From positions 33,046,001-33,110,000 of the forward strand of contig NC_091283.1 of assembly GCF_032444005.1 (NCBI RefSeq): a stretch of 64,000 bases of DNA, given 5' to 3'. Under the pieces are notes generated by a model. That model searched no databases. It worked only from the letters and a program-made list of their open reading frames with translations, and was not told the DNA's origin. Origin of the DNA: Ranitomeya imitator (taxonomy: Eukaryota). The stretch's first letter is position 1, and every line of letters begins with the position of its first letter. Positions 28,254 through 64,000 of this stretch are shown in pieces. The position numbers were made by a program, and so were the translations under genes.

Positions 28254-28942
28254 CTAGGAGTTGACGTGGACTCTCCGTTTATGTTTGTTGAGAGCTGCGT
28301 TGTCCAGGAAACACTTCTCGCACTGGGGGCAGGCGAACGGCTTCTCTCCGGTGTGTGACATCTCGTGTCTCAGCATGGTGGCTTTACAGATAAACCCTCT
28401 CTCGCAATGTTTGCAGGTGTACGGCTTCTCCCCAGAATGCAATCGTTTGTGGACCACCAAGTTGGCGTTTTGGCAGTAACTCTTGCCGCACTCGTTGCAC
28501 ATGTAAGGTTTCTTCTCGGCGTGGATCCCGGAGTGCTTGACCACGCTCGATTGTCTAGTGAATCTTCTCCCGCAAACCGGACACGAGTACGGCTTCTCTT
28601 TGGTGTGGACTACCTTGTGGAGCACTAGATGGGAATGGTTCGTGAATTTCCGTCCACACTCCGCACAGGAGAACGGTCTCTCCCCGGTGTGGATCCGTAG
28701 GTGGGCTTCCACATGATTCCTGCAGGAAAACCTCTTTCCGCACGTAGGACATGGAAACGCCTTCTCCCCAAAGTGAAGTTTCAGGTGACGGCTGAGAGAC
28801 GACTTGCTGGCGAATCTTTTTCTGCACAGTCCACATGGAGAAGTCTTCGCTCCTGACTTTGATTTTCGGCATCTTTTATCGGTAACTGTTAATTGGTAGA
28901 TGATTTCTGATTTCACAGTCGGATCTTTGATGAAGTCATTAT
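28254..28942 (-). CDS. ZNF gene 2, last coding exon with 7 C2H2 fingers
   Basis: Acceptor poly-T-CTACCAG|AT (phase 1, DNDFIK...); seven CxxC-12-HxxxH fingers with TGEKP-type linkers; stop at 28254. Confidence 0.93.
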
Positions 28943-29395
28943 CTGGTAGAAAAAAAAAAAAAAACAAAGAGAGAAGAACGAACGGTTTATTCTCCGCCAC
29001 CATCTGAATAATTATTTCGGAATGATGACAAAACGAGCCCTCTAGGTGGAAGGGACCCCGTTATTCATTGTGGAGGACCCAGCGTGTCCATGCATTACAC
29101 AAATGGCAAATTTACTTCATGTGATGCTTAAAGGGATTGTCCACAACTTTGATATTGCTGGTCTATCCTCAGGATTGGCCGTAGATATCAGATAGGTAGG
29201 GGCAGACACCCAACACTCCCACCGATCAGCAGCCATCAGCTCCTCTGGTGACTGTGAACAAGGTACGGAGTAGTGTTCTGGCCGTTCTCAGGATCTGGAG
29301 GTCAACTTCTATTGAAGTCAATGGGAGGTGGACTGAAGGATCAGAGAACGGTCACGAGAAAGTGCGTAGAGCTGTGGTGAGATGGCACCATACAC

Positions 29396-29592: not shown

Positions 29593-31204
29593 CAGGTCCT
29601 TCTCAAAAAATTAGCATATAGTGTTAAATTTCATTGTTTACCATAATGTAATGATTACAATTAAATTTTCATATATTATAGATTCATTATCCACCAACTG
29701 AAATTTGTCAGGTCTTTTATTGTTTTAATACTGATGATTTTGGCATACAACTCCTGATAACCTAAAAAACCTGTCTCAATAAATTAGCATATCAAGAAAA
29801 GGTTCTCTAAACGACCTATTACCCTAATCTTCTGAATCAACTAATTAACTCTAAACACATGCAAAAGATACCTGAGGCTTTTATAAACTCCCTGCCTGGT
29901 TCATTACTCAAAACCCCCATCATGGGTAAGACTAGCGACCTGACAGATGTCAAGAAGGCCATCATTGACACCCTCAAGCAAGAGGGTAAGACCCAGAAAG
30001 AAATTTCTCAACAAATAGGCTGTTCCCAGAGTGCTGTATCAAGGCACCTCAATGGTAAGTCTGTTGGAAGGAAACAATGTGGCAGAAAACGCTGTACAAC
30101 GAGAAGAGGAGACCGGACCCTGAGGAAGATTGTGGAGAAGGAGCGATTCCAGACCTTGGGGAACCTGAGGAAGCAGTGGACTGAGTCTGGTGTGGAAACA
30201 TCCAGAGCCACCGTGCACAGGCGTGTGCAGGAAATGGGCTACAGGTGCCGCATTCCCCAGGTAAAGCCACTTTTGAACCATAAACAGCGGCAGAGGCGCC
30301 TGACCTGGGCTACAGAGAAGCAGCACTGGACTGTTGCTAAGTGGTCCCAAGTACTTTTTTCTGATGAAAGCAAATTTTGCATGTCATTCGGAAATCAAGG
30401 TGCCAGAGTCTGGAGGAAGACTGGGGAGAAGGAAATGCCAAAATGCCTGAAGTCCAGTGTCAAGTACCCACAGTCAGTGATGGTGTGGGGTGCCATGTCA
30501 GCTGCTGGTGTTGGTCCACTGTGTTTCATCAAGGGCAGGGTCAATGCAGCTAGCTATCAGGAGATTTTGGAGCACTTCATGCTTCCATCGGCTGAAATGC
30601 TTTATGGAGATGAAGATTTCATTTTTCAGCACGACCTGGCACCTGCTCACAGTGCCAAAACCACTGGTAAATGGTTTACTGACCATGGTATTACTGTGCT
30701 CAATTGGCCTGCCAACTCTCCTGACCTGAACCCCATAGAGAATCTGTGGGATATTGTGAAGAGAAAGTTGAGAGACGCAAGACCCAACACTCTGGATGAG
30801 CTTAAGGCCGCTATTGAAGCATCCTGGGCCTCCATAACATCTCAGCAGTGTCACAGGCTGATTGCCTCCATGCCACGCCGCATTGAAGCAGTCATTTCTG
30901 CCAAAGGATTCCCCACCAAGTATTGAGTGCATAACTGAACATTATTATTTGTTGGTTTTTTTGTTTGTTATTAAAAAACACTTTTATTTGATTGGATGGG
31001 TGAAATATGCTAATTTATTGAGACAGGTTTTTTGGGTTATCAGGAGTTGTATGCCAAAATCATCAGTATTAAAACAATAAAAGACCTGACAAATTTCAGT
31101 TGGTGGATAATGAATCTATAATATATGAAAGTTTAATTGTAATCATTACATTATGGTAAATAATGAAATGTAACACTATATGCTAATTTTTTGAGAAGGA
31201 CCTG
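29593..31204 (+). mobile_element. Full-length Tc1 transposon (1612 bp, 200-bp TIRs, TA TSD)
   Basis: TA|CAGGTCCTTCTC...GAGAAGGACCTG|TA; TIRs 29593-29792 and 31005-31204, 4 mismatches by eye; AAATTAGCATAT at both ends of each TIR (IR/DR type). Confidence 0.96.
29922..30926 (+). CDS. Tc1-family DD34E transposase, uninterrupted (334 aa)
   Basis: MGKTSDL... paired-like [25 protein letters not shown] with 34 residues between the second D and E; the ORF-track start at 29859 is an upstream alternative. Confidence 0.93.
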   Translation: MGKTSDLTDVKKAIIDTLKQEGKTQKEISQQIGCSQSAVSRHLNGKSVGRKQCGRKRCTTRRGDRTLRKIVEKERFQTLGNLRKQWTESGVETSRATVHRRVQEMGYRCRIPQVKPLLNHKQRQRRLTWATEKQHWTVAKWSQVLFSDESKFCMSFGNQGARVWRKTGEKEMPKCLKSSVKYPQSVMVWGAMSAAGVGPLCFIKGRVNAASYQEILEHFMLPSAEMLYGDEDFIFQHDLAPAHSAKTTGKWFTDHGITVLNWPANSPDLNPIENLWDIVKRKLRDARPNTLDELKAAIEASWASITSQQCHRLIASMPRRIEAVISAKGFPTKY

Positions 31205-40102: not shown

Positions 40103-40892
40103 GGCTAGTTTCACATTTGCGTTAAAGGCAGCGTTAAAAACGCATCCGCAGGTGGTGGAAAAAACGCATGTAAACGCGTACAAACGCTGCGTTTTTTAGA
40201 TGCATGCGTTTTCGTATGCGGTAAAAAAACGCCGCGTTTTTACGTTTACATGCGTTTTTTTTTTTACCGCGTTTGCGTTTTTTTAAAAGCATGATGAGAA
40301 ATTTCACAAGTGAAAACTCAAGATCCAGACACCGCCAATGGGACTATAGAGGGCGTGTGACATGACTCTGTGGACCAAAATATGGAAAAATTATAGCTCT
40401 CAAAATGTGGTAACGCAAAAAATATTTTTTGGAATAAAAAGCGTCTTTAGTGTGTGACGGCTGCCAATCATAAAAATCAACTAGAAAACCCGCTATAAAT
40501 AGAAATGGCTATGGTTAGGATCCCTTTATCACCTTGATGGTGGGGGGTGGCTTATCAGTGTGTAGACTTGTTTTTCTCTATGGAAATGCATGCGTTAAAA
40601 AACGCAACCAAACGCATGTGCTTAAAAACGCATGCGTTTACATAGACAGCAATACGTTTTTTTGCGGCAAAAAAAGGCATGCTTTTTTTGCGGCAAAAAA
40701 AGCCTCTAGAAATTAAAACATGTTGCATTTCCGCAACAAAACGCAAGCATAGAAACGACGCATGCATCGTCAAACGCGGCAAAACGCATACAAAAAAACT
40801 GCATGCGTTTTTAATGTTAAATATAGGGAAAAAAACGCATGCTTTTTTTGCGTTAAAACGCAGCGGCAAAAAACGCAAATGTGAAACCAGCC
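40103..40892. mobile_element. PIF/Harbinger (Tourist-like) MITE
   Basis: TIR GGCTAGTTTCACATTTGCG / CGCAAATGTGAAACCAGCC; 3-bp TTA TSD; internal AAAACGCA/TGCGTTTT repeats around an unrelated core at about 40295-40560. Confidence 0.88.
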
Positions 40893-41623
40893 TTAGAAGA
40901 ATACTTGCCACATAACACTTACATGACATCTTCACAAGTTTGACACAACGGAGATTTTCCGGAAATCCGGAAAGTAGAAGCAAGGTTTTCTATTCACTCC
41001 AAGGCGTTTCGGCGACTTTCCCAAGGTAAAAACCCAAAATATTTATTCCTCCCTGAGTAAGGTGCTGAAACGTGTTGGTAAAATAAAAAAACCTTGCTTC
41101 TACTCTCCAGATCTCATCCTTTACGTGAGTGCAGCCGGCACATCGTGATATGTCCGCTTTGCCAAACTGCTATCTGGGCGATACTCTCCTCCAAGCTTCT
41201 GCAGGTGTTGTTTCCTTATACAGCCCCTACAGGTGCGTGTTACCATCTGGTCCCTTACCATGCTGCCCTATCTGTGAGGTTTTGTCCCATCCAGATCTTC
41301 CCATCTTCGAAAGTCTGAGATCCTTATGTCATTAAAGTAATGGCCTTACGTTTTTGTAGAGACCTTCAGTTTGTACGACCCAGGCTTCTGCAGGTGTTAT
41401 TTCCTTTTACAACCCCTACAGGTGCGTTACCATCTGGTTCCTTATCATACTGCCCTATCTGTGAGGCTTTGTCCCATCCAGATCTTCCCATCTTTGAAAG
41501 TCTGAGATATGTCATCAAAATAACGGCCTGACGGTTTCCCAGACAGACCTTCAGCAAGTACAACCTGGTTTTAGAAAAGTCCGGAATCAAGAACAGTCTT
41601 GCCCCGCAGTCTGACGCTGGGCT

Positions 41624-42907
41624 TTACAATGAACCCTTTTGTGCACCATCAGTGAAAACCACAGAATGAAGCTTTTCCCACATTCGCACTGGTAAGGCTT
41701 TTCTCCAGTCCTCAAAGTGGACATCGCTGTCACCGTCCAGGTCATCGACGAGAAGCTCCTGCGTTTTGTGCGTTCTCTGGTGTCTGTACAGGTGAGACGA
41801 GCAGGTGTAACTTTTACCGCACTCACATTTATAAGGTTTCTCCAGATTACCGCCTCTAGCCCGAGAACTTGCAAAGACACCTTGGTGAGCCCTCTGATGC
41901 CGGTAGAGATGAGAACTAGACGTGTAGCTTTTCCCACACGTGCACACGTATGGTTTCACCCTCCCTTGGGTGTCCATCTCCATATCCTCCACAGAGTCAC
42001 CTCCATGTTCATCTATCTGGACCTTCTGTAGGGTGTGAGTCTTCTGGTGTCGGGTCAGATGTGACCTCCTGCTGAACGCCCTTCCACAATCGCATATGTA
42101 AGTCTTGGCACTTTCGTTAGGTCCTTCTAAGTGAGATCTCTGATGTCTGTAGAGATGAGAGCTGCACGTGTAACGCTTCCCACAAGGGCAGATATAAGGC
42201 TTCAACAGACTTGCTTTACGGTCAGACTCAAGGTTGGCCAAGGAACCAACTTGACATGTCTTCTGATGTCTGTGGAGATGAGAAATGCTGGTGTAGCTCT
42301 TCCCACAGATGCATGGAAAAGATTTTCTACTTGAGACCTTCACTTCACCAGGTTCTCCGACACCACGATCACTACTCATCCCATTATTCCCTACGTGAGT
42401 CTTCTGGGGTCTGTAGAGATGTGAGCTGCTGGAGAAGCTTTTACCACACACAAAGGTGGACGACCTTGACTGTTGGTTTTGAGATTGCTTGGTATCTTTG
42501 GTCTCTTCGGGTTTTTCTTCTTGGTCACTTTTTTCTTCTTTTATAGTTTTCTGAAGTCCAGTCTTCATTGGCGTATGGCTCGGTTCAATTAACAAACCCT
42601 CGCGATTTTCTTCAGGATTATCGTCAGCTTTATCGAGTGCTGTTGACGGATCTTCTACGGTTTCATTGACAACACAACCGGAGCGTTCCTTCCTAATACA
42701 GTTTGTTCCACCACAAGTGAAATCTTTTTTAGTTTCGATAGACTCTCCATTATGGTCAGTCTTACAGAGGTTGTCCTCCTCGGGACACTTCCCACGACAA
42801 ATGGTGGAGAATGCGGGCAATGAGGAATCATTGGGTTTCAACTTCTTTAATTCAGTCGATGTTCTTAGGGAAGTTTCTATGTAAGATCTTTTCCATGCTG
42901 TTTCCAT
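41624..42907 (-). CDS. ZNF gene 3, main ORF (427 aa from Met 42907) with C-x-C zinc fingers; possibly a pseudogene
   Basis: Five CxC-GKxY/F-x5-L-x2-H fingers plus one degenerate finger; a seventh is in a shifted frame (to 41587); in-frame TAA at 42946-42944 between the best acceptor (42981) and the ATG. Confidence 0.75.
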   Translation of the reverse strand: METAWKRSYIETSLRTSTELKKLKPNDSSLPAFSTICRGKCPEEDNLCKTDHNGESIETKKDFTCGGTNCIRKERSGCVVNETVEDPSTALDKADDNPEENREGLLIEPSHTPMKTGLQKTIKEEKSDQEEKPEETKDTKQSQNQQSRSSTFVCGKSFSSSSHLYRPQKTHVGNNGMSSDRGVGEPGEVKVSSRKSFPCICGKSYTSISHLHRHQKTCQVGSLANLESDRKASLLKPYICPCGKRYTCSSHLYRHQRSHLEGPNESAKTYICDCGRAFSRRSHLTRHQKTHTLQKVQIDEHGGDSVEDMEMDTQGRVKPYVCTCGKSYTSSSHLYRHQRAHQGVFASSRARGGNLEKPYKCECGKSYTCSSHLYRHQRTHKTQELLVDDLDGDSDVHFEDWRKALPVRMWEKLHSVVFTDGAQKGSL

Positions 42908-43173
42908 GGGCTTCCTACTTATACAATCTTGCTCTTCTCCAACTTAGCAGAATCTCAAATAGACTGGATGATCAGGATCTGCTGGATAGGAGCACAAATA
43001 TTCAAATTATCACCCCAACATTATGTTTTATAGTTATTCAAACAAGCCACTGCTTACATTTGTGCCTCTCCAAGATGCCAAGAGCAAATAAACAAATCAA
43101 GGAATATTCCTGTCACAAAAGCATATGCATGTCTTCTGGGAGGAAAATAGTTTATGCAATTGGGTGTCCTTAC

Positions 43174-43218: not shown

Positions 43219-44802
43219 CTGCAGAAGGAGTTAACTGAGAATCCCGAAAGTGAGCTCCTTCTGAGTTTATAACTCTACAACTCCTCCGTGTCGATTTATG
43301 ACCACATCAAAGCTATATTTAACAGTTGAGCTCATAAATCAGATGAGGAACTCAGAAAAAGTCAGAAAAAAGAGTTCCAAACTTTCCCGTCAGAAGGAGC
43401 TCGCCGTCAGGTTCTCAATCCGCAGCAGACAACGCAATTCAGCGGCTGTGGAATTAAAAACTGTCCAATATTTTTTACGAAAACTAATTGCAAAAGTGGT
43501 TTTTAGCCCAAAACACATCTAGTGATCCCGAGAACGAGGCTCTTTAATGGAGTAATGACGGAGCATTTACGGCTGCTGCCATATCGAAAGTCGTCAGCTT
43601 CCTTAAAGTCTTAAACCATATTCACACAGTTGTTTTTTGCAAGCGGATCAGCTCTAAACTCCTCATAAAATGCTTGGAAATATCGTCCTACTTATGGGAA
43701 ATTCATCACCATCCACTTCATGACTTTGGTAATTTTTTTTTTTTTTTCCTTTTGTCAGAGAAAATTTCAAATCCATGAGACATCTCACATATCACCCTCA
43801 CATTGACACATATGGGACTAATAACTGAGATTGCTAAAAACTAAAGCAGGAGAAGTAGAAAGAGCTGAACACAACATCATTTGAAGCAGGGACCTCCTGC
43901 AGTGAGCAGGTAATTGCAGAGAAATGTTTTGAGGACAAGACAGGAAGCCGGAGATCTAATTACGCAGAAGCAGGGAAGTATCTTTCCTAAGGATAGTGCT
44001 TCCTCTTATCAAAGAAGCTTCTTAAGACTTTTTTGTCTATGATGTCCAAATATGAATATTGGGAGTTCTGCATCAATCCGATATTTATGGGATATAGATT
44101 TTCAGAGTCGTAGCAAGGGGACAAAAATAAAACATTCAATTACACATCACTGTATGGCCAGTAGAACCACTTAAACTCATCTGTCCGATAGATGATGCTA
44201 TACATGTCATATACCATCTCTATCAAAAGGTAAAATCGAAGTGGGAAACATGATGACGATATCTACCGCCTGGGACCTCCAAGAGGGAAGATATCCCGAA
44301 AGTTGGGGATTTCATAAAATTCTGAAGGGCTGAGCACATCCCACAACCAGCCTTACATGAGTTCATCAAGGGAAGGTATGTGGGCGCCACTTTGATCCAG
44401 TAAAAAGCAAAATGTGGATTTGGTCATTTGTCAGTCCTGGCAGGTGCAGCTCGCTGTGGGTTTTGTCCATTTTCCTAAGAAGTACCTTCCTCCCCTAAGC
44501 TCGGAGCCATTTCGTTGACATCAGGTTTAGTAATTCTCTTTCATTATTCCTTTTCATTCTGTGTTTGTATATATTGTATTGTGTTGTTCCTATTTTGTAT
44601 ATTTTTATAAACCCAGCCTACCTTTCAGGATTCAATATATAAAAATTGAATAGCCCTGTTCCTCTTGCTCTGTAAACCGCACCCCTGAAGCAATATACTG
44701 ACTGTAACGGGTGTCCAATCAGCCGGTATAAACGATTGGTGGTGGCAGCTGGTAGTTCCTTTTGTTATTATGAAGTTGGCAGTGACTGTACCGGGGTATA
44801 CG

Positions 44803-46352
44803 CACTGTGCAAAAAAATAAAGGGAACACTTAAACAACACAATTTAATTCCAAGTCATTCACACTTCTGTGAAATCAACCTGTTCCGTTATGAAGCAACA
44901 CTGATTGGGAATCCATGTCTCCTGCTGTTGTGCAAATGGAGCAGACAACAGGTAGAAATGATAAGCAATTAGCAAGACAACTCAAATAAAGGAGTGGTAG
45001 TGCAGGGGGTGACCACAGACCATTTCTCAGTTCTCATTCTTCTTGGCTATTTTGATCACTTCTGCATTTTGTCATTGCTCACCCCTAGAGGTACTGTACA
45101 GTAGCATGAGGCAGTGTCTAAAACCCACAGAAGTTGCTCAGGTAGTGCAGCTCATCCAGGATGGAACATCAATGCGGTCCATGGCAAAAAGGGTAGCTGT
45201 GTCTGTCAGCAGTTTCCAGTGCATGGAGCAGATACCAGGAGACAGGACAGTACACCAGCAGACGTGGAGGGGTCCGTAGGAGGGCAACAACCCAGCAGCA
45301 GGACCGCTACCTACTCCTTGGTGCAAGGAGGAACAGTGCCAGAGCCCTGCAAAATTACATCTAGAAGGCCACTAACATCCATGTGTCTGCTCAAACAGTC
45401 AGACACAGACTCCAGGAGGGCCCGACGTCCACAAGTGGGTGTTGTGATTACAGTCCAAAACCATGCAGGGCAATTGGCATTTGCTGGATTCGACTTTGGA
45501 GCCCTGTGATTTTCACGGATGACATCAGGTTCACACTGAGAACATGTGACAGACTTGAGAGTCTGGAGACGCCGTGGAGAACCTTCTGCTGCCAGCAACA
45601 TCCTCCTGCATGACTGTTTTGGCAGTGGGTCAGAAATGGTGTTGGGAGGCCATTCTTTGGAGCAGGGCTGTGGAGACGGGAAAGCCAAACCTCCAACTAC
45701 TCAATTTTCATTAAACCGACTCCAAGAAAATGGGCTCAGACTCCACAACTCCGACTCTACACCCCTGCTTTGGAGGGCAACATAGCCCTCCATGTGCTTG
45801 CCAGAGGTACCCTGACTGCCATTACGTACCGGGATGAGATCCTTAGACCCCTTGTGAGAGCAATATGCAGGTTTAATGCACCCGGGTTCCTTCTGATGCA
45901 GGACAATGCTCGGTCTCATGTGGCTGGAGTGTGGCAGCAGTTCCTGCACGATGAAGGCATTGAAGCTATGGACTGGCCAAACCGTTCCCAAGACCTGAAT
46001 CCAATCGAGCACATCATGTCTCGCACCATCCACCAACGTCACGTCGCACCACAGACTGTCCAGCAGTTGACTGATGCTTTAATCCAAGTCTGGGAAAAGA
46101 TCCCTCAAGAGAACATCCGTCTTCTCAGCGGGAGCATGCCCAGGTGTTGTAGGGAGGTCATACAGACACGTGGAGGCCACACACACTACTGAGCATCATT
46201 TCCTTGTCTTGATGCATTTCCACTGAAGTTTAGGTTTTATTGTTCTCAACACATTCCACTATGTAATGAATAAAGATTTACACCTGGAATATTTCATTCA
46301 GTGATATCTAGGATGTGGGATTTTAGTGTTCACGTTATTTTTTTGAGCAGTG
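44803..46352 (+). mobile_element. Degenerate Tc1 element, same family as 35921-37396
   Basis: Termini CACTGTGCAAAAAAATAAAGGGAACAC / TTTTGAGCAGTG|TA; broken transposase ([16 protein letters not shown]..., MQDNARSH, SQDLNPIEH, ends GGHTHY* at 46192). Confidence 0.9.
45663..45767. mobile_element. 105-bp hAT-type MITE inserted in the Tc1 transposase
   Basis: 8-bp TSD CTTTGGAG (45655-45662, 45768-45775); imperfect TIR CAGGGCTGTGGAGACGG / CCGACTCTACACCCCTG. Confidence 0.85.
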
Positions 46353-46360
46353 TATATATA

Positions 46361-47435
46361 TATATATATAATTGTCTAAGGGGTACTTCCGTCTGTTTGT
46401 CTGTAACTTCCGTAACGGAAATCCAGCGTCGCTGATTGGTCGCGCCCGACCGGCCGCGACCAATCAGCGATATTGGGGGGGGGGGGAAGTTAAACACCAC
46501 TTCACTTTTTACTATAGATGCTGCCTATGCAGCATCAATAATAAAAACAAATGTTAAAAATATGGTATTAATAATAATAAAAAAACATTATATTCTCACC
46601 TTCCGGCATCCACGGCAGCCTTTCCTGCACCTGGCGACGCTCCGATCCCAAGAATGCATTGCGGCAATAACTTGAGATCACGTAGCGGTCTCGTGAGACC
46701 CCTACATGATCACAAGTTATTGCCGGAAGGCATTACTGGGAACGGAGCGTCGCGAGGAGCATCGCTAAACGCCTGGGCTGGATCCGGGGGCCGCCGGAAG
46801 GTGAGTATATAACTATTTTTTATTTTAATTGGTTTTTTAACAGGGATATGGTGCCCACACTGCTATATACTACGTGGGCTGTTATATACTACGTGGGCTG
46901 GGTTATATACTACGTGGACTTTGTGATATACTACGTGGGCTGTGTTATATACGGCGTGGCCTGTGTTATATACTACGTCGCTGTGCTATACACTACGTGG
47001 GCTGTGTTATATACTACGTCGCTGTGCTATACACTACGTGGGCTGTGGTATATACTACGTCGTACGTGGGCTGTGTTATATACTACGTCGCTGTGCTATA
47101 TACTATGCGGGCTGTTATATACTGCGTGGGGTGTGTTATATACTACGTGGGCTATATTATATACTGCGTGGCCTGTGTTATATACTGCGTGGGCTGTGTT
47201 ATACACTACGTCGCTGTGCTATATACTACGTGGCCGGTGTTATATACTGTGTGTGCTGTTATACAGTACGTCGCTGTGCTATATACTACGTGGGCTGTGT
47301 TATATACTGTGAGGCTATGCTATATACTACGTGGCTGAGCAATATACTACGTGGCTGTGCAACATACTACGTGGGCTGTGTTATATACTGCGTGGACTGT
47401 GCTATATACTACATACATATTCTAGAAAATCGGGC

Positions 47436-47438: not shown

Positions 47439-47488
<50 letters not shown>

Positions 47489-47502
47489 CACACATATATA
47501 TA

Positions 47503-49108
47503 CAGTGGGGTAAAAAAGTAGTTAGTCAGTCAGCAATAGTGCAAGTTCCACCACTTAAAAAGATGAGAGGCGTCTGTAATTTACATCATAGGTAGACCTC
47601 AACTATGGGAGACAAACTGAGGGAAAAAAATCCAGAAAATCATATTGTCTGTTTTTTTATCATTTTATTTGCATATTATGGTGGAAAATAAGTATTTGGT
47701 CAGAAACAAACAATCAAGATTTCTGGCTCTCACAGACCTGTAACTTCTTCTTTAAGAGTCTCCTCTTTCCTCCACTCATTACCTGTAGTAATGGCACCTG
47801 TTTAAACTTGTTATCAGTATAAAAAGACACCTGTGCACACCCTCAAACAGTCTGACTCCAAACTCCACTATGGTGAAGACCAAAGAGCTGTCAAAGGACA
47901 CCAGAAACAAAATTGTAGCCCTGCACCAGGCTGGGAAGACTGAATCTGCAATAGCCAACCAGCTTGGAGTGAAGAAATCAACAGTGGGAGCAATAATTAG
48001 AAAATGGAAGACATACAAGACCACTGATAATCTCCCTCGATCTGGGGCTCCACGCAAAATCCCACCCCGTGGGGTCAGAATGATCACAAGAACGGTGAGC
48101 AAAAATCCCAGAACCACGCGGGGGGACCTAGTGAATGAACTGCAGAGAGCTGGGACCAATGTAACAAGGCCTACCATAAGTAACACACTACGCCACCATG
48201 GACTCAGATCCTGCAGTGCCAGACATGTCCCACTGCTTAAGCCAGTACATGTCCGGGCCCGTCTGAAGTTTGCTAGAGAGCATTTGGATGATCCAGAGGA
48301 GTTTTGGGAGAATGTCCTATGGTCTGATGAAACCAAACTGGAACTGTTTGGTAGAAACACAACTTGTCGTGTTTGGAGGAAAAAGAATACTGAGTTGCAT
48401 CCATCAAACACCATACCTACTGTAAAGCATGGTGGTGGAAACATCATGCTTTGGGGCTGTTTCTCTGCAAAGGGGCCAGGACGACTGATCCGGGTACATG
48501 AAAGAATGAATGGGGCCATGTATCGTGAGATTTTGAGTGCAAACTTCCTTCCATCAGCAAGGGCATTGAAGATGAAACGTGGCTGGGTCTTTCAACATGA
48601 CAATGATCCAAAGCACACCGCCAGGGCAACGAAGGAGTGGCTTCGTAAGAAGCATTTCAAGGTCCTGGAGTGGCCTAGCCAGTCTCCAGATCTCAACCCT
48701 ATAGAAAACCTTTGGAGGGAGTTGAAAGTCCGTGTTGCCAAGCGAAAAGCCAAAAATATCACTGCTCTAGAGGAGATCTGCATGGAGGAATGGGCCAACA
48801 TACCAACAACAGTGTGTGGCAACCTTGTGAAGACTTACAGAAAACGTTTGACCTCTGTCATTGCCAACAAAGGATATATTACAAAGTATTGAGATGAAAT
48901 TTTGTTTCTGACCAAATACTTATTTTCCACCATAATATGCAAATAAAATGTTAAAAAAACAGACAATGTGATTTTCTGGATTTTTTTTTCTCAGTTTGTC
49001 TCCCATAGTTGAGGTCTACCTATGATGTAAATTACAGACGCCTCTCATCTTTTTAAGTGGTGGAACTTGCACTATTGCTGACTGACTAAATACTTTTTTG
49101 CCCCACTG
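47503..49108 (+). mobile_element. Full-length Tc1 transposon (1606 bp, 208-bp TIRs, TA TSD)
   Basis: TA|CAGTGGGG...CCCCACTG|TA inside a (TA)n tract; TIRs 47503-47710 and 48901-49108, about 6 mismatches by eye. Confidence 0.96.
47870..48892 (+). CDS. Tc1-family DD34E transposase, uninterrupted (340 aa)
   Basis: [16 protein letters not shown]..., [23 protein letters not shown] with D34E spacing. Confidence 0.94.
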
Positions 49109-51005: not shown

Positions 51006-53556
51006 AGTGTGCAGTGGGTGCTGTGTGCGCTGTGTGTGGTGGGCGCCGTGTGTGGTGGGCGCTCTGTGTGGTGGGCGCTCTGTGTGGTGGGCGCTCTGTG
51101 TGGTGGGCGCTCTGTGTGGTGGGCGCTCTGTGTGGTGGGCGCTGTGTGTGGTGGGCGCTCTGTGTGTGGTGGGCGCTCTGTGTGGTGGGCGCTCTGTGTG
51201 GTGGGCGCTGTGTGTGGTGGGCGCTCTGTGTGGTGGGCGCTCTGTGTGGTGGGCGCTCTGTGTGGTGGGCGCTCTGTGTGGTGGGCGCTCTGTGTGGTGG
51301 GCGCTGTTTGGTGGGCGCTCTGTGTGGTGGGCGCTCTGTGTGGTGGGCGCTCTGTGTGGTGGGCGCTCTGTGTGGTGGGCGCTCTGTGTGGTGGGCGCTC
51401 TGTGTGGTGGGCGCTCTGTGTGGTGGGCGCTCTGTGTGGTGGGCGCTCTGTGTGGTGGGCGCTCTGTGTGGTGGGCGCTCTGTGTGGTGGGCGCTCTGTG
51501 TGTGGTGGGCGCTGTGTGTGGTGGGCGCTCTGTGTGGTGGGCGCTGTGTGTGGTGGGCGCTCTGTGTGGTGGGCGCTGTGTGTGGTGGGCGCTCTGTGTG
51601 TGGTGGGCGCTCTGTGTGGTGGGCGCTGTGTGTGGTGGGCGCTGTGTGTGGTGGGCGCTGTGTGGTGGGCGCTCTGTGTGGTGGGCGCTGTGTGTGGTGG
51701 GCGCTCTGTGTGGTGGGCGCTCTGTGTGGTGGGCGCTCTGTGTGTGGTGGGCGCTGTGTGGTGGGCGCTCTGTGTGGTGGGCGCTGTGTGTGGTGGGCGC
51801 TGTGTGTGGTGGGCGCTGTGTGTGGTGGGCGCTCTGTGTGGTGGGCGCTCTGTGTGTGGTGGGCGCTGTGTGGTGGGCGCTCTGTGTGGTGGGCGCTCTG
51901 TGTGTGGTGGGCGCTCTGTGTGGTGGGCGCTCTGTGTGGTGGGCGCTCTGTGTGTGGTGGGCGCTGTGTTTGGTGGGCGCTCTGTGTGGTGGGCGCTCTG
52001 TGTGGTGGGCGCTCTGTGTGGTGGGCGCTGTGTGTGGTGGGCGCTGTGTGTGGTGGGCGCTGTGTGTGGTGGGCGCTGTGTGTGGTGGGCGCTCTGTGTG
52101 TGGTGGGCGCTGTGTGGTGGGCGCTCTGTGTGGTGGGCGCTCTGTGTGGTGGGCGCTCTGTGTGTGGTGGGCGCTCTGTGTGGTGGGCGCTCTGTGTGGT
52201 GGGCGCTCTGTGTGTGGTGGGCGCTGTGTTTGGTGGGCGCTCTGTGTGGTGGGCGCTCTGTGTGGTGGGCGCTGTGTGTAGTGGGCGTTGTGTGTGGTGG
52301 GCGCTCTGTGTGTTGGGCGCTCTGTGTGGTGGGCGCTCTGTGTGGTGGGTGCTCTGTGTGGTGGGCGCTGTGTGTGGTGGGCGCTGTGTGTGGTGGGCGC
52401 TGTGTTTGGTGGGTGCTCTGTGTGTGGTGGGCGCTGTGTGTGGTGGGCGCTGTGTTTGGTGGGCGCTGTGTGTGGTGGGCGCTCTGTGTGTGGTGGGCGC
52501 TGTGTGTAGTGGGCGTTGTGTGTGGTGGGCGCTCTGTGTGTTGGGCGCTCTGTGTGGTGGGCGCTCTGTGTGGTGGGTGCTCTGTGTGGTGGGCGCTGTG
52601 TGTGGTGGGCGCTGTGTGTGGTGGGCGCTGTGTTTGGTGGGCGTTGTGTGTGGTGGGCGCTCTGTGTGGTGGGCGCTGTGTGTGGTGGGCGCTCTGTGTG
52701 GTGGGCGCTGTGTGTGGTGGGCGCTCTGTGTGGTGGGCGCTCTGTGTGGTGGGCGCTCTGTGTGGTGGGCGCTGTGTGTAGTGGGCGTTGTGTGTGGTGG
52801 GCGCTCTGTGTGTTGGGCGCTCTGTGTGGTGGGCGCTCTGTGTGGTGGGTGCTCTGTGTGGTGGGCGCTGTGTGTGGTGGGCGCTGTGTGTGGTGGGCGC
52901 TGTGTGTGGTGGGCGCTCTGTGTGTGGTGGGCGCTGTGTGGTGGGCGCTGTGTGTGGTGGGCGCTGTGTGTGGTGGGCGCTGTGTTTGGTGGGCGTTGTG
53001 TGTGGTGGGCGCTGTGTGTGGTGGGCGCTCTGTGTAGTGGGCGCTCTGTGTGGTGGGTGCTGTGTGTAGTGGGCGCTCTGTGTAGTGGGCGCTCTGTGTG
53101 TGGTGGGCGCTGTGTGCGGTGGGCGCTCTGTGTAGTGGGCGCTCTGTGTGTGGTGGGCGCTCTGTGTGGTGGGCGCTCTGTGCAGTGGGCGCTGTGTGTG
53201 GTGGGCGCTGTGTGCGGTGGGCGCTGTGTGCGGTGGGCGCTCTGTGTAGTGGGCGCTCTGTGTGTGGTGGGCGCTCTGTGTGGTGGGCGCTCTGTGTGGT
53301 GGGTGCTGTGTGTGGTGGGCGCTGTGTGCGGTGGGCGCTGTGTGCGGTGGGCGCTCTGTGTAGTGGGCGCTCTGTGTGTGGTGGGCGCTCTGTGTGGTGG
53401 GCGCTCTGTGTGGTGGGTGCTGTGTGCGGTGGGCGCTGTGTGCGGTGGGCGCTCTGTGTAGTGGGCGCTCTGTGTGTGGTGGGCGCTCTGTGTGGTGGGC
53501 GCTCTGTGTGGTGGGTGCTGTGTGTGGTGGGCGCCATGTGTAGTGGGCGCTGTGTG
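51006..53556. repeat. 18/20-bp G-rich minisatellite (GTGGTGGGCGCTCTGT[GT]), about 135 units
   Basis: Tandem units; diagnostic variant block at 52279, 52507 and 52779. Confidence 0.97.
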
Positions 53557-54620
53557 CAGCCACCTGGCGCACCAGAACCTCCACCACCATGGTGTCACCG
53601 TGTGCGGCGCTCTGTGACGGAGGATTCTCACATTTGGTGCAGCAGCCAATCACATTGCAGCGCTCGTTATTATCGCAGTGACCTGAGTGGTCGTATTTCT
53701 TTATGGTGGTCTTCAGCCCGCGCTGCTGGATTAATAATAAGCCGTCTCTATGCTCCAGTGTATACTACCTGCATACAGCTGGCGACTGTCGGAGCATGCT
53801 GGGAGTTGTAGTCCTGCATCAAGCAGCCAGACACAAGTCACTCTCCCCTGATTATCTGGCAATTCCTTATTGTAATGTGATCGGAGTGTGGGAAATCTGG
53901 CACTACAAGTCCCAGCATGGCCAGCCTGAGCTGTAATACCCCGGGGTCCCGCCTCGCACATGCCCCACCACTCACCAGCTTCTCCCAGCAGGGGATGTGC
54001 GCACTGCGCCGCCTAGTGCTTACAGTCGTAGTAGGTACCGGATTTCAGCCTAGCTGCCCTGTGATTGGCTACGTCTGCTCCAGTGACATCTCTCAGCCAA
54101 TCAGAGTTCACGTAGACGCGCAGCTGCAGAGATGTGAGCCAATCACAGGGCTGCTTGTAAGATTGAAGTGATGCGCGCAATGTAGAGCAGGGAATGCATG
54201 CTGGGAGTTGTAGTTCTCGCTGTGGTGCTTGTGTACATGGCACCTGCTGCGCTATTATCCACTGTACATGAAAACCTCCTGGCGAGTAGTGGAAGAAGGA
54301 GGCGTTCTGGTGCCTGTAACCCTGCGCCTGCTCTGTAGAGGATAGATCACGAAGAACTACAAGTCCCAGGATTACTACACTATTCTTGTCTCCTAACTGA
54401 CCTCATAATCTGATAATGACTATGAAACCAATAGGAAATAATGTGACTGTGGGGGTCTCTGCGGGGCAGCAGGCAGGATATTGGGGGTATATCAGAGCGC
54501 AGCACCGCGGGTCACAACAACGAAGCAACGACAGGACGCGGCCGCCATCAGAATGACTGGGGTCACTGCCAACGAGCTGTTATCAATGGCTGCACTAAGC
54601 TCCCAACACCTATCACTGTA
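53557..54620. promoter_or_regulatory. CpG-rich, probably bidirectional promoter (gene 3 on -, unidentified transcript on +)
   Basis: Four ACTACAAnTCCCAG motifs (53794-53812 rev, 53902-53919, 54196-54214 rev, 54356-54370), several CCAAT boxes, candidate minus-strand donor CAG|GTGGCT at 53563. Confidence 0.7.
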
Positions 54621-54623
54621 GGC

Positions 54624-57600
54624 GACACCGAGACGCCATCATTCCCTGTAGACACCAAGACGCCATCATTCCCTGTAGACACCAAGACGCCATCATTCCC
54701 TGTAGACACCAAGACGCCATCATTCCCTGTAGACACCAAGACGTCATCATTCCCTGTAGACACCAAGACGCCATCATTCCCTGTAGACACCAAGACGTCA
54801 TCATTCCCTGTAGACACCAAGACGCCATCATTCCCTGTAGACATTACCAAGACGCCATCATTCCCTGTAGACACCAAGACGCCATCATTCCCTGTAGACA
54901 CCAAGACGCCATTATTCCCTGTAGACATTACCAAGACGCCATCCTTCCCTGTAGACACCAAGACGTCATCATTCCCTGTAGACATTACCAAGACGCCATC
55001 ATTCCCTGTAGACACCAAGACGCCATCATTCCCTGTAGACACCAAGACGCCATCATTCCCTGTAGACACCAAGACGCCATCATTCCCTGTAGACACCATC
55101 ATTTCCTGTAGACACCAAGACGTCATCATTCCCTGTAGACACCAAGACGTCATCATTCCCTGTAGACATTACCAAGACGCCATCATTCCCTGTAGACACC
55201 AAGACGCCATCATTCCCTGTAGACACCAAGACGTCATCATTCCCTGTAGACATTACCAAGACGCCATCATTCCCTGTAGACATTACCAAGACGCCATCAT
55301 TCCCTGTAGACACCGAGACGCCATCATTCCCTGTAGACACCAAGACGCCATCATTCCCTGTAGACACCAAGACGCCATCATTCCCTGTAGACATTACCAA
55401 GACGCCATCATTCCCTGTAGACACCAAGACGTCATCATTCCCTGTAGACATTACCAAGACGCCATCATTCCCTGTAGACACCAAGACGCCATCATTCCCT
55501 GTAGACACCAAGACGCCATCATTCCCTGTAGACATTACCAAGACGCCATCATTCCCTGTAGACACCAAGACGCCATCATTCCCTGTAGACACCAAGACGC
55601 CATCATTCCCTGTAGACACCAAGACGCCATCATTCCCTGTAGACACCAAGACGCCATCATTCCCTGTAGACATTACCAAGACGCCATCATTCCCTGTAGA
55701 CACCAAGACGCCATCATTCCCTGTAGACACCAAGACGCCATCATTCCCTGTAGACACCAAGACGCCATCATTCCCTGTAGACATTACCAAGACGCCATCA
55801 TTCCCTGTAGACACCAAGACGCCATCATTCCCTGTAGACACCAAGACGCCATCATTCCCTGTAGACACCAAGACGCCATCATTCCCTGTAGACACCAAGA
55901 CGCCATCATTCCCTGTAGACACCAAGACGCCATCATTCCCTGTAGACATTACCAAGACGCCATCATTCCCTGTAGACACCAAGACGCCATCTATCCCTGT
56001 AGACACCAAGACGTCATCATTCCCTGTAGACATTACCAAGACGCCATCATTCCCTGTAGACACCAAGACGCCATCTATCCCTGTAGACACCAAGACGCCA
56101 TCATTCCCTGTAGACACCAAGACGTCATCATTCCCTGTAGACACCAAGACGTCATCATTCCCTGTAGACATTACCAAGACGCCATCATTCCCTGTAGACA
56201 CCAAGACGCCATCATTCCCTGTAGACACCAAGACGTCATCATTCCCTGTAGACATTACCAAGACGCCATCATTCCCTGTAGACATTACCAAGACGCCATC
56301 ATTCCCTGTAGACACCAAGACGTCATCATTCCCTGTAGACACCAAGACGCCATCATTCCCTGTAGACACCAAGACGCCATCATTCCCTGTAGACACCAAG
56401 ACGCCGTCATTCCCTGTAGACACCAAGACGCCATCATTCCCTGTAGACACCAAGACGCCATCATTCCCTGTAGACATTACCAAGACGCCATCATTCCCTG
56501 TAGACACCAAGACGTCATCATTCCCTGTAGACACCAAGACGCCATCATTCCCTGTAGACACCAAGACGCCATCATTCCCTGTAGACATTACCAAGACGCC
56601 ATCATTCCCTGTAGACATTACCAAGACGCCATCATTCCCTGTAGGCACCAAGACGCCGTCATTCCCTGTAGACACCAAGACGCCGTCATTCCCTGTAGAC
56701 ACCAAGACGCCGTCATTCCCTGTAGACACCAAGACGCCATCATTCCCTGTAGACATTACCAAGACGCCATCATTCCCTGTAGGCACCAAGACGTCATCAT
56801 TCCCTGTAGACACCAAGACGCCATCATTCCCTGTAGACACCAAGACGCCATCATTCCCTGTAGACACCAAGACGCCATCATTCCCTGTAGACACCAAGAC
56901 GCCATCATTCCCTGTAGACACCAAGACGCCGTCATTTCCTGTAGACACCAAGACGCCATCATTCCCTGTAGACACCAAGACGCCATCATTCCCTGTAGAC
57001 ATTACCAAGACGCCATCATTCCCTGTAGACACCAAGACGCCATCATTCCCTGTAGACATTACCAAGAGGCCATCATTCCCTGTAGACATTACCAAGACGC
57101 CATCATTCCCTGTAGGCACCAAGACGTCATCATTCCCTGTAGACACCAAGACGCCATCATTCCCTGTAGACACCAAGACGCCATCATTCCCTGTAGACAC
57201 CAAGACGCCATCATTCCCTGTAGACACCAAGACGCCATCATTCCCTGTAGACACCAAGACGCCGTCATTCCCTGTAGACACCAAGACGCCATCATTCCCT
57301 GTAGACACCAAGACGCCATCATTCCCTGTAGACATTACCAAGACGCCATCATTCCCTGTAGACATTACCAAGACGCCATCATTCCCTGTAGACATTACCA
57401 AGACGCCATCATTCCCTGTAGACATTACCAAGACGCCATCATTCCCTGTAGACATTACCAAGACGCCATCATTCCCTGTAGGCACCAAGACGCCGTCATT
57501 CCCTGTAGACACCAAGACGCCGTCATTCCCTGTAGACACCAAGACGCCGTCATTCCCTGTAGACACCATCATTCCCTGTAGACATTACCAAGACGCCATC

Positions 57601-63600: not shown

Positions 63601-64000
63601 CATCATTCCCTGTAGACATTACCAAGACGCCATCATTCCCTGTAGACACCAAGACGCCATCATTCCCTGTAGACATTACCAAGACGCCATCATTCCCTGT
63701 AGACATTACCAAGACGCCATCATTCCCTGTAGACATTACCAAGACGCCATCATTCCCTGTAGACACCAAGACGTCATCATTCCCTGTAGACATTACCAAG
63801 ATGCCATCTTTCCCTGCAGACATTAGAAAGACCCGCCATCTTTCCCTGTAGATATTACCAAGATGCCGCCATCTTTCTCTGTAGACATTACCAAGACACC
63901 ATCATTCCCTGTAGTCATTACCACGATGCCGCCATCTTTCCCTGTAGACACCAAGACGCCATCATTCCCTGTAGACATTACCAAGACGCCATCTTTCCCT
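54624..64000. repeat. Giant 27/30-bp minisatellite (GTAGACA[TTA]CCAAGACGCCATCATTCCCT), more than 9.3 kb, about 330 units
   Basis: 27- and 30-bp units, six 19-bp deletion units, ~2-kb internal duplication; units degenerate from about 63790, suggesting the array edge is near. Confidence 0.98.

What the first reader, a model, noticed from the sequence alone, without database searches (positions are those of the whole stretch)
41587..42460. Zinc-finger protein built from widely spaced C-x-C fingers with a shared recognition helix
Every complete finger has one residue between the cysteines (CIC, CPC, CDC, CTC, CEC, CEC) instead of the canonical 2-4. Linkers are about 10-28 aa rather than TGEKP. 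Six of the seven helices have S at +2, H at +3 and R at +6 (SHLxRH). Isolated CxC fingers occur as variants, but a whole array is unusual and may represent an undescribed subfamily with a different fold or binding mode. By the standard code H3/R6 would favour GGN, matching G-rich repeats; that last step is speculative.
Basis: partly seen in the sequence, partly recalled or inferred. Interest (0 to 1): 0.75.

Follow-up and report, generated by a model that had tools for sequence, protein, structure and literature searches.

The report
Frog zinc-finger gene with C-x-C knuckles
This is a real, apparently expressed frog gene from a previously undescribed, frog-wide family of zinc-finger proteins in which every finger has one residue between its two cysteines instead of the usual two to four; in this poison-frog genus the first finger has decayed and a small frameshift cuts off the last one.

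Summary
The minus-strand ORF 41624-42907 (427 aa) encodes five intact C-x-C fingers (CIC, CPC, CDC, CTC, CEC). Their helices are near-identical (S+2, H+3, R+6) and the linkers are 10-28 aa. Finger 1 has lost two zinc ligands. The seventh finger (second CEC) is out of frame, after an apparent 2-nt loss at about 41707.

The frameshift is real. Ranitomeya variabilis has the same 427-aa product with the same shifted tail, and three read sets show no indel at the site.

The copy is not decayed. About 20 frog proteins share the C-x-C knuckle, from Bombina and Discoglossus to Rana and Dendrobates: 154 of 160 fingers, against 0.7% in other ZNFs. Finger dN/dS is about 0.07. No non-frog member was seen, and no paper on the family was found.

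A different fold is not supported. AlphaFold2 predicts a classical beta-beta-alpha finger (pLDDT 88, 0.6-1.3 Å to solved fingers). Plant IDD ZF4 is a solved C-x-C precedent.

Function is unknown. My best guess is a nuclear protein whose separately tethered, identical fingers bind GG-containing sites multivalently. The link to the nearby 16-mer array is untested. The scan had not noted this family before.

The parts
40864..42981 (-). Terminal exon as seen in transcript-like contigs: short 5' leader, whole CDS, and 3'UTR to at least 40864
   Evidence: Contigs of three small runs cover 40864-42982 (X1), 41067-42979 (X3, depth 48 against 4-7 in unique flanks) and 41479-42979 (X17). The DNA run X10 covers the gene and its flanks evenly at about 5-14x.
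42982..42999 (-). Likely 3' splice site: pyrimidine tract plus AG at 42983-42982. This implies at least one upstream non-coding exon, which was not located.
   Evidence: Sequence (..tttgtgctcctatccag|c..). All three transcript-like contigs stop at 42979-42982.
41624..42907 (-). CDS of 427 aa (P0001), contained in a single exon
   Evidence: Orthologues start at the same Met. Their gene ranges equal CDS length in D. tinctorius, Rana temporaria and R. variabilis.
42836..42895 (-). Conserved basic N-terminal motif (consensus RKRAS..x14..KKxK); inferred bipartite nuclear localisation signal
   Evidence: Consensus line of alignment A1. The NLS reading is inference.
42395..42460 (-). Finger 1, degenerate. 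First Cys replaced by Phe (shared with D. tinctorius); first His replaced by Pro (both Ranitomeya proteins).
42254..42319 (-). Finger 2, CIC knuckle, C2HC type (H-x3-C)
42131..42196 (-). Finger 3, CPC knuckle, helix CSSHLYR
42035..42100 (-). Finger 4, CDC knuckle, helix RRSHLTR. The 10-aa linker before it is fixed across Neobatrachia.
41885..41950 (-). Finger 5, CTC knuckle, helix SSSHLYR
41768..41833 (-). Finger 6, CEC knuckle, helix CSSHLYR
41706..41708 (-). Frameshift site. The window reads GAC T GGA where orthologous proteins have D-F-G, an apparent 2-nt loss.
   Evidence: The same shifted tail occurs in the R. variabilis protein. Contigs of X1, X3 and X10 span the site with no gaps.
41629..41694 (-). 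Finger 7 (CEC, hydrophobic helix ILWFSLM), still intact but out of frame. The stop codon of its frame is at 41587-41589.

Best explanation
Shown. This is a single-copy gene whose whole coding sequence lies in one terminal exon, inside a cluster of ordinary C2H2/KRAB zinc-finger genes of a poison frog, probably a Ranitomeya species. It belongs to a frog-wide family of zinc-finger proteins with no KRAB, SCAN or BTB domain. In this family every finger has a one-residue zinc knuckle (C-x-C), nearly every finger carries the same helix (S/C-S-S-H-L-Y-R), and the fingers are separated by long, partly acidic linkers instead of TGEKP. Purifying selection on the protein maintains these features, not recent gene conversion. 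In Ranitomeya the gene is a derived, shortened version: finger 1 has lost two zinc ligands, and a 2-nt frameshift removes finger 7.

Inferred. Each finger is a PRDM9/KZFP-type finger that lost one knuckle residue in an ancestral unit. That unit was then multiplied, and Pelobates and Rhinophrynus still show a regular repeat of about 52 aa. The fingers still fold as classical zinc-bound beta-beta-alpha modules. The conserved basic N-terminus takes the protein to the nucleus.

Most likely mechanism (about 35-40% for nucleic-acid binding in general, about 20% for this specific model). The fingers are too widely tethered to wrap DNA contiguously. They act as several equivalent reading heads, each contacting a GG-containing triplet through H+3 and R+6, which gives multivalent binding to clustered or repeated G-rich sites. 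The seventh finger, with its hydrophobic helix, would be a protein-contact finger. It is present in other neobatrachians and lost here.

The confidence given (0.6) is for the statement as a whole: about 0.9 for the shown part and much lower for the mechanism.
For: Family and conservation.
- Orthologues occur in Dendrobates, Anomaloglossus, Engystomops, Hyla, Leptodactylus, Eleutherodactylus, Bufo, Hyperolius, Rana, Mantella, Pyxicephalus, Pseudophryne, Rhinophrynus and Pelobates.
- Bombina and Discoglossus carry 14-18 C-x-C fingers in long gene models.
- In the family 154 of 160 fingers are C-x-C, against 0.7% in other ZNFs.

Selection.
- dN/dS in the fingers is 0.066, against 0.45 elsewhere, between two ranoid contigs.
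- F5 and F6 share 18 of 22 residues but only 6 identical codons.
- Among the listed differences between organisms A and B, the finger region shows 6 synonymous and 2 non-synonymous changes.

Architecture and fold.
- The linker pattern 25/19/10/28/~20/25 is conserved in Neobatrachia. Pelobates has a period of 52 aa.
- AlphaFold2 gives pLDDT 82-87 per finger and 87.7 for a single finger, with beta-beta-alpha secondary structure and 0.6-1.3 Å rmsd to DNA-bound C2H2 fingers.
- Each finger aligns to PRDM9 and ZFP568 fingers with a one-residue knuckle gap.

Expression and gene structure.
- Transcript-like contigs are confined to 40864-42982 and end at an AG acceptor.

Frameshift.
- It is shared with R. 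variabilis and absent as an indel in three data sets.

Neighbourhood.
- Neighbouring genes are ZNF or KRAB genes.
Against: - No zinc, DNA, RNA or partner binding has been measured for any family member.
- The acidic linkers, and a neutral pI (6.8-7.7) in two of the eight orthologues computed (range 6.8-8.9), do not favour strong DNA binding.
- Single C2H2 fingers usually bind DNA weakly.
- The only solved C-x-C finger I could document, plant IDD ZF4, uses its helix to bind a protein, not DNA (PMC5873383).
- The runs that hold the gene are not on record as RNA, so expression is inferred from contig pattern.
- dS is near saturation in the dN/dS pairs.
- Loss of two fingers in Ranitomeya could mean that function is eroding in this genus.
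- Absence outside frogs rests on the best 150 of 22,087 hits and a word search limited by protein length.
Confidence: 0.6

Rival explanations
1. The identical helices are repeated docking surfaces for a protein or an RNA, not DNA-reading heads. The protein would be a multivalent scaffold.
For: The documented solved C-x-C finger, plant IDD ZF4, docks its helix into the SHR protein and is not needed for DNA binding (PMC5873383). The linkers are long, disordered and partly acidic. F7 has an entirely hydrophobic helix face. The helix has been invariant for more than 150-200 My, unlike the fast-changing specificity residues of cluster ZNFs.
Against: The fingers keep the features typical of DNA-binding KZFP fingers: the K of CGK, the KPY lead-in, and H+3/R+6. 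Their nearest sequence and structural neighbours are all DNA-bound fingers. No partner is known.
Confidence: 0.25
2. In Ranitomeya the gene is on its way to becoming a pseudogene. The fingers seen here are a remnant with no function in this genus.
For: F1 has lost two ligands and F7 is frameshifted off. The N-terminal third shows only non-synonymous differences among those listed between organisms A and B.
Against: The 427-aa ORF is intact in two species. Among the listed differences the finger region shows 6 synonymous and 2 non-synonymous changes. No zinc ligand or helix residue of F2-F6 differs between the two Ranitomeya proteins. Transcript-like contigs occur in runs from several studies.
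Confidence: 0.12
3. The C-x-C knuckle forces a new fold or a new metal-site geometry.
For: C-x-C lies outside the canonical C-x2-4-C definition. Pfam's model cannot align the first Cys.
Against: AlphaFold2 predicts a classical beta-beta-alpha finger with high confidence and sub-1.3 Å fits to solved fingers. IDD ZF4, with CX1C, is described as a classical C2HC beta-beta-alpha finger. A profile of these fingers aligns to ZBTB43 chains 2csh and 8ymz with no net length change, which suggests that a solved animal example exists (the alignment itself was not seen).
Confidence: 0.05
4. It is an artefact: sequencing or assembly errors in a canonical ZNF, or a decayed copy of one.
For: None beyond the rarity of C-x-C fingers.
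Against: The same in-frame spacing occurs in every finger of about 20 independently assembled frog proteins. Contigs from three further data sets match the window without gaps.
Confidence: 0.01

Closest known systems
Tandem KZFP/PRDM9-type C2H2 fingers (e.g. PDB 5v3g PRDM9, 5v3m ZFP568)
   Same: They are the best sequence and structure matches: 34-41% identity over arrays and up to 77% per finger. They share the KPY lead-in, CGK, the aromatic residue, Leu+4 and H-x3-H. The gene lies in a ZNF/KRAB gene cluster.
   Different: Every knuckle is one residue shorter. There are no TGEKP linkers (no PF13465 hit) and no KRAB domain. The helices are nearly identical to each other and frozen across frogs, whereas those of cluster ZNFs are diverse and fast-evolving.
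Fourth finger of plant BIRD/IDD factors (CX1CX12HX3C; Pfam PF22992; JKD-SHR-SCR crystal structure)
   Same: Same C-x-C knuckle. Finger 2 here even has the same C2HC ligand pattern. The fold is a classical beta-beta-alpha (PMC11610476 table 1; PMC5873383). There is a weak ungapped Pfam hit to F4.
   Different: It is a single finger in a four-finger domain of plant proteins. Its helix carries the SHR-binding motif, which is absent here. The Pfam score of 15.9 is below the cutoff of 26.3. There is no evolutionary relationship, so the similarity is convergent.
Sporadic C-x-C fingers inside ordinary vertebrate poly-ZNFs; probably one finger of human ZBTB43/ZNF297B (PDB 2csh, 8ymz)
   Same: Same knuckle length in an otherwise ordinary finger. 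Frequency is about 0.7% of fingers. The ZBTB43 chains align to the C-x-C profile with no net insertion.
   Different: These are isolated variants among 10-30 canonical fingers, not a whole array. The ZBTB43 case is inferred from alignment coordinates only.
Widely spaced zinc-finger proteins such as Xenopus dsRBP-ZFa / JAZ (ZNF346) (from general knowledge, not tested here)
   Same: Several similar fingers separated by long linkers, acting as independent modules.
   Different: Those fingers are C-x2-C...H-x5-H (PF12171) and bind dsRNA. No PF12171 hit was found here.

Membership tests
Classical C2H2 zinc finger (Pfam PF00096) | Two Cys separated by 2-4 residues | tested here: not met
   All fingers are C-x-C. 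The HMM match starts at profile position 5. There is a one-residue gap against PRDM9 and ZFP568 fingers.
Classical C2H2 zinc finger (Pfam PF00096) | Twelve residues from the second Cys to the first His, with a conserved aromatic residue and Leu, then H-x3-5-H | tested here: met
   The pattern is CGKSY-x5-L-x2-H-x3-H in F3-F6. F2 ends H-x3-C.
Classical C2H2 zinc finger (Pfam PF00096) | Score above Pfam's gathering cutoff | tested here: met
   60.5 bits against a cutoff of 25.2, in 5 stretches
Classical C2H2 zinc finger (Pfam PF00096) | Beta-beta-alpha fold | tested here: met
   By prediction only. AlphaFold2 pLDDT is 82-88, DSSP gives EE-EE-helix, and rmsd to solved fingers is 0.6-1.3 Å.
Classical C2H2 zinc finger (Pfam PF00096) | One tetrahedrally bound zinc per finger | not testable with these tools
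   Needs metal titration or a solved structure.
KRAB / tandem poly-ZNF (KZFP-type) | N-terminal KRAB (or SCAN/BTB) effector domain | tested here: not met
   No such Pfam hit in the 427-aa protein. No KRAB-A pattern anywhere in the window.
KRAB / tandem poly-ZNF (KZFP-type) | Fingers joined by TGEKP-type 5-7 aa linkers (PF13465) | tested here: not met
   Linkers are 10-28 aa and there is no PF13465 hit. The neighbouring exon 28254-29003 does have such a hit.
Plant BIRD/IDD fourth finger (PF22992) | CX1C-X12-H-X3-C with the SHR-binding helix motif, and a score above cutoff | tested here: not met
   The score is 15.9 bits against a cutoff of 26.3. Only F2 is C2HC. The helix is SHLYRHQ, not R(K/R)DxxITHxAFCD.
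JAZ/dsRBP-ZFa-type dsRNA-binding fingers (PF12171) | C-x2-C...H-x5-H fingers matching PF12171 | tested here: not met
   No PF12171 hit at E<=1. The spacing here is H-x3-H.

The most novel reading that the evidence does not exclude
The combination of a C-x-C knuckle, one frozen helix repeated five to seven times (up to 18 in Bombina gene models) and long linkers of fixed length is a distinct recognition device. It would be a frog-specific multivalent binder of a tandemly repeated or non-B G-rich nucleic acid, such as a satellite or a G-quadruplex-prone repeat. The shortened knuckle would tune how each finger sits on its target.
Probability: 0.15. Interest if true: 0.7.

Novelty: new variant of a known kind. 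Interest (0 to 1): 0.48.

Why it matters
Textbook and PROSITE-style definitions of the C2H2 finger require two to four residues between the cysteines. Here nature has kept a whole array of one-residue knuckles under strong purifying selection across the frog radiation. That makes these proteins a ready-made test of how knuckle length affects zinc affinity, folding and nucleic-acid docking. They are also a conserved, effector-less, repeat-like ZNF of unknown function that is missing from the model frog literature. The Ranitomeya version, which lacks fingers 1 and 7, offers a natural deletion series.

Tried and rejected
- Orthologue DNA for synteny and codon analysis could not be fetched from the large frog assemblies. 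dN/dS was therefore done on three Logan contigs only (L001-L003), where dS is near saturation.
- The ESM Atlas search gave only generic ZNF clusters.
- Foldseek on the 206-aa model gave low global TM scores because the linkers are floppy. A single-finger model was used instead.
- Six literature searches found no description of a frog or animal C-x-C finger family. The library covers open-access papers only.
- I could not display the alignment to ZBTB43 chains 2csh and 8ymz, because only the top hits are printed. That precedent rests on alignment coordinates.
- The indels in organism B's contig (12 gap letters) were not itemised. Whether organism B has the frameshift is therefore unknown. The R. 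variabilis protein settles that the frameshift is shared within the genus.
- A window-wide regex found no KRAB-A box.
- I considered programmed frameshifting or a small intron as ways to rescue finger 7. I rejected both: there is no room for an intron, the conserved linker residues run right up to the site, and transcript-like contigs carry the same sequence.
- The upstream 5' exon was not located.
Full report
**1. What is in the sequence**

On the minus strand, an ORF runs from an ATG at 42907 to a stop at 41624 and encodes 427 aa. It contains six finger-like units.
- F1 is degenerate: it reads FVCGKSF...SHLYRPQKTH, with the first Cys and the first His missing.
- The other five are intact, with knuckles CIC, CPC, CDC, CTC and CEC.
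- A seventh unit, YQCECGKSFILWFSLMVHKRVH, lies at 41629-41694 in a different frame, whose ORF ends at 41587.

The linkers between in-frame fingers are 25, 19, 10, 28 and 17 aa. Numbering the helix as in Zif268, F1-F6 all have S at +2, H at +3 and R at +6. Position -1 is S, C or R.

Pfam recognises the fingers (zf-C2H2, 60.5 bits), but every match starts at profile position 5, just after the first Cys. There is no hit to the TGEKP-linker model or to KRAB, SCAN or BTB. phmmer alignments to PRDM9 and ZFP568 fingers place a one-residue gap in each knuckle.

**2. More than chance, and not decay**

A word-index search found orthologues of 36-82% identity in 14 named frog genera, plus three unnamed transcript-like contigs. 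In the alignment, both Cys of every knuckle are invariant or nearly so.

A regex count shows that proteins P0001-P0018 have only C-x-C fingers and essentially no canonical ones. An exhaustive profile search of 1.84 billion representatives added two long gene models with 14-18 C-x-C fingers. These come from Discoglossus pictus and Bombina bombina. No other C-x-C-rich protein appeared among the best 150 hits.

Overall, 154 of 160 family fingers are C-x-C, against 28 of 4074 (0.7%) in the 241 other ZNFs retrieved.

The shared helix is maintained by selection, not by recent conversion.
- F5 and F6 share 18 of 22 residues but only 6 identical codons.
- Finger-specific traits are orthologous across species: F2 ends in H-x3-C, and the linker before F4 is exactly 10 aa.
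- Nei-Gojobori dN/dS between two ranoid contigs is 0.066 in the fingers and 0.45 elsewhere. For the window against L001 the values are 0.18 and 0.58. dS is about 1, so these ratios are rough.

**3. Family architecture**

In Neobatrachia the plan is fixed:
- a basic N-terminal motif (RKRAS...KKxK), which I read as a bipartite NLS (inference);
- about 150 poorly conserved residues;
- seven fingers with linkers of about 25/19/10/28/20/25 aa;
- a last finger whose helix is hydrophobic (ILWFSLM, or ILSFSLL in ranoids).

Pelobates and Rhinophrynus instead show a regular repeat of about 52 aa, made of a finger plus a 30-aa linker, and lack that last finger. The Bombina and Discoglossus models span 35 kb and 12.7 kb, so they may join several tandem genes.

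The simplest history is as follows (inference). A KZFP-type finger lost one knuckle residue in an early frog. The finger-plus-linker unit was then amplified, and the neobatrachian seven-finger form became fixed.

**4. State of the gene in this genome**

Where orthologues read ...HFEDFGEKPYQCEC..., the window reads GAC T GGA at 41710-41704. This is an apparent 2-nt loss, and it puts F7 out of frame.

The protein's own 90% cluster contains Ranitomeya variabilis LOC143806088. That protein is also 427 aa, is 96% identical, and has the same shifted tail. Contigs from three further data sets of the window's organism span the site with no gaps. The frameshift is therefore real and predates the split of two Ranitomeya species.

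F1's first Cys is also missing in Dendrobates tinctorius but present in Anomaloglossus. The His-to-Pro change in F1 is seen only in the two Ranitomeya proteins.

None of the 18 differences between the two Ranitomeya proteins touches a zinc ligand or a helix residue at -1 to +6 of F2-F6. Among the differences listed against a second organism, the finger region has 6 synonymous and 2 non-synonymous changes, and the N-terminal third has 0 and 3. That list is partial.

**5. Gene structure, copy number, expression**

- The gene ranges equal CDS length in D. tinctorius, Rana temporaria and R. variabilis, so there is one coding exon.
- In three small runs, single contigs cover 40864-42982, 41067-42979 and 41479-42979, with much lower depth outside. 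All stop at an AG preceded by a pyrimidine tract (42983-42982).
- A large DNA-type run covers the gene and its flanks evenly at about 5-14x.

I read this as a single-copy gene whose terminal exon is spliced to at least one upstream non-coding exon and is transcribed. The runs are not on record as RNA, so expression is inferred.

The neighbours are ordinary ZNF or KRAB genes in Rana and R. variabilis. The window itself has a canonical seven-finger exon at 28254-29003 on the same strand.

**6. Fold**

AlphaFold2 on residues 190-395 with 15 orthologues gives beta-beta-alpha units at pLDDT 82-87, joined by linkers below 55. A single 33-residue finger gives pLDDT 87.7. It superposes on DNA-bound fingers of designed, PRDM9, ZFP568, WT1, ZBTB24 and other proteins at 0.6-1.3 Å over 26-29 columns. 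The E-values are weak, as expected for so small a domain.

There are two precedents.
- Finger 4 of plant IDD/BIRD proteins is CX1CX12HX3C (PMC11610476). In the JKD-SHR-SCR crystal it is described as a classical beta-beta-alpha C2HC finger whose helix binds the SHR protein, not DNA (PMC5873383).
- A profile of the frog fingers aligns to ZBTB43/ZNF297B chains 2csh and 8ymz with no net length change across the knuckle. Every canonical finger shows one extra residue there, and C-x4-C fingers show three. This suggests that a solved animal C-x-C finger exists, but I could not view the alignment.

Taken together, a new fold is unlikely. Zinc geometry remains untested.

**7. How it probably works**

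Shown: the family is conserved and lacks an effector domain, its finger surface is frozen, and its linkers are disordered.

Inferred: nuclear localisation.
- By the standard recognition code (general knowledge), R+6 and H+3 each favour G, giving GGN, with GGG for F4, which has R at -1.
- Linkers of 10-28 aa cannot support the canonical 3-bp stepping.
- I therefore favour several equivalent, independently tethered heads that bind clustered or repeated GG-containing sites multivalently.
- Finger 7 would act as a protein-contact finger.

The main rival is that the repeated helix docks a protein or an RNA, as IDD ZF4 does.

No evidence connects it to this protein.

**8. Novelty and verdict**

The proteins are annotated automatically as "uncharacterized", "ZNF436-like", "ZNF883-like" or "PRDM9-like". 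I found no paper on the family. Earlier notes of this scan do not mention it.

It is a new variant of a known kind, the C2H2 ZNF. The family is real and conserved, and a zinc-finger specialist would find it moderately surprising. No mechanism has been demonstrated.

Noticed in passing
window 28254-29003 (-): A canonical C2H2 exon with seven C-x2-C fingers and TGEKP-type linkers (PF13465, 137 bits). It is on the same strand, 12 kb downstream of the C-x-C gene. In Rana temporaria the C-x-C gene lies inside the range of such a canonical ZNF gene and is named as its 'isoform X2'. The two may share a promoter.
   Followed up: partly
window 29859-30926 (+) and 47870-48892 (+): Two intact-looking Tc1/mariner transposase ORFs (DDE_3 plus HTH_Tnp_Tc3_2). 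The second also has a Sleeping Beauty-type HTH.
   Followed up: no
window 51023-53556: A tandem array of about 157 copies of a 16-mer (GTGGGCGCTGTGTGTG), 90% matches, with strong positive GC skew. It lies about 8 kb upstream of the gene on its strand.
   Followed up: partly
window 46864-47412: A minisatellite of period 21 (also 41 and 61), about 26 copies, followed by a (TA)32 run at 47439-47502.
   Followed up: no
window 41191-41508: Two direct copies (92-94% identical, 187-189 nt apart) of a unit of about 130 nt, inside the 3'UTR of the C-x-C gene.
   Followed up: no
window 40191-40978 and 44722-45312: Very high-copy repeats. Summed contig depth reaches up to 7x10^5 in the DNA run, against about 6-14 for the gene. 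The transcript-like contigs break at the first of these.
   Followed up: no
window 54563-63851 (-): A chain of long overlapping ORFs (up to 908 aa) with weak collagen-like hits and a constant GC skew of about -0.42. This is probably a long low-complexity or tandem repeat, not a gene.
   Followed up: no
P0122 (Bombina bombina, 2646 aa) and P0121 (Discoglossus pictus, 2087 aa): In these early-branching frogs the C-x-C fingers occur 14-18 times per gene model. Many end H-x5-C instead of H-x3-H, and canonical fingers sit at the C-terminus. The models may fuse tandem genes.
   Followed up: partly
PDB 2csh_A, 8ymz_E (human ZBTB43/ZNF297B): These chains align to the C-x-C finger profile with no net insertion across the knuckle. 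One ZBTB43 finger may therefore be a solved C-x-C finger. I could not view the alignment.
   Followed up: partly
window protein residues 383-398 and orthologues (linker F6-F7): A conserved hydrophobic-then-acidic stretch (ELLVDDLDxDSDV) resembles a SUMO-interaction motif or a CK2 site. A second conserved DSVED lies in the F4-F5 linker. This rests on the sequence pattern only.
   Followed up: no
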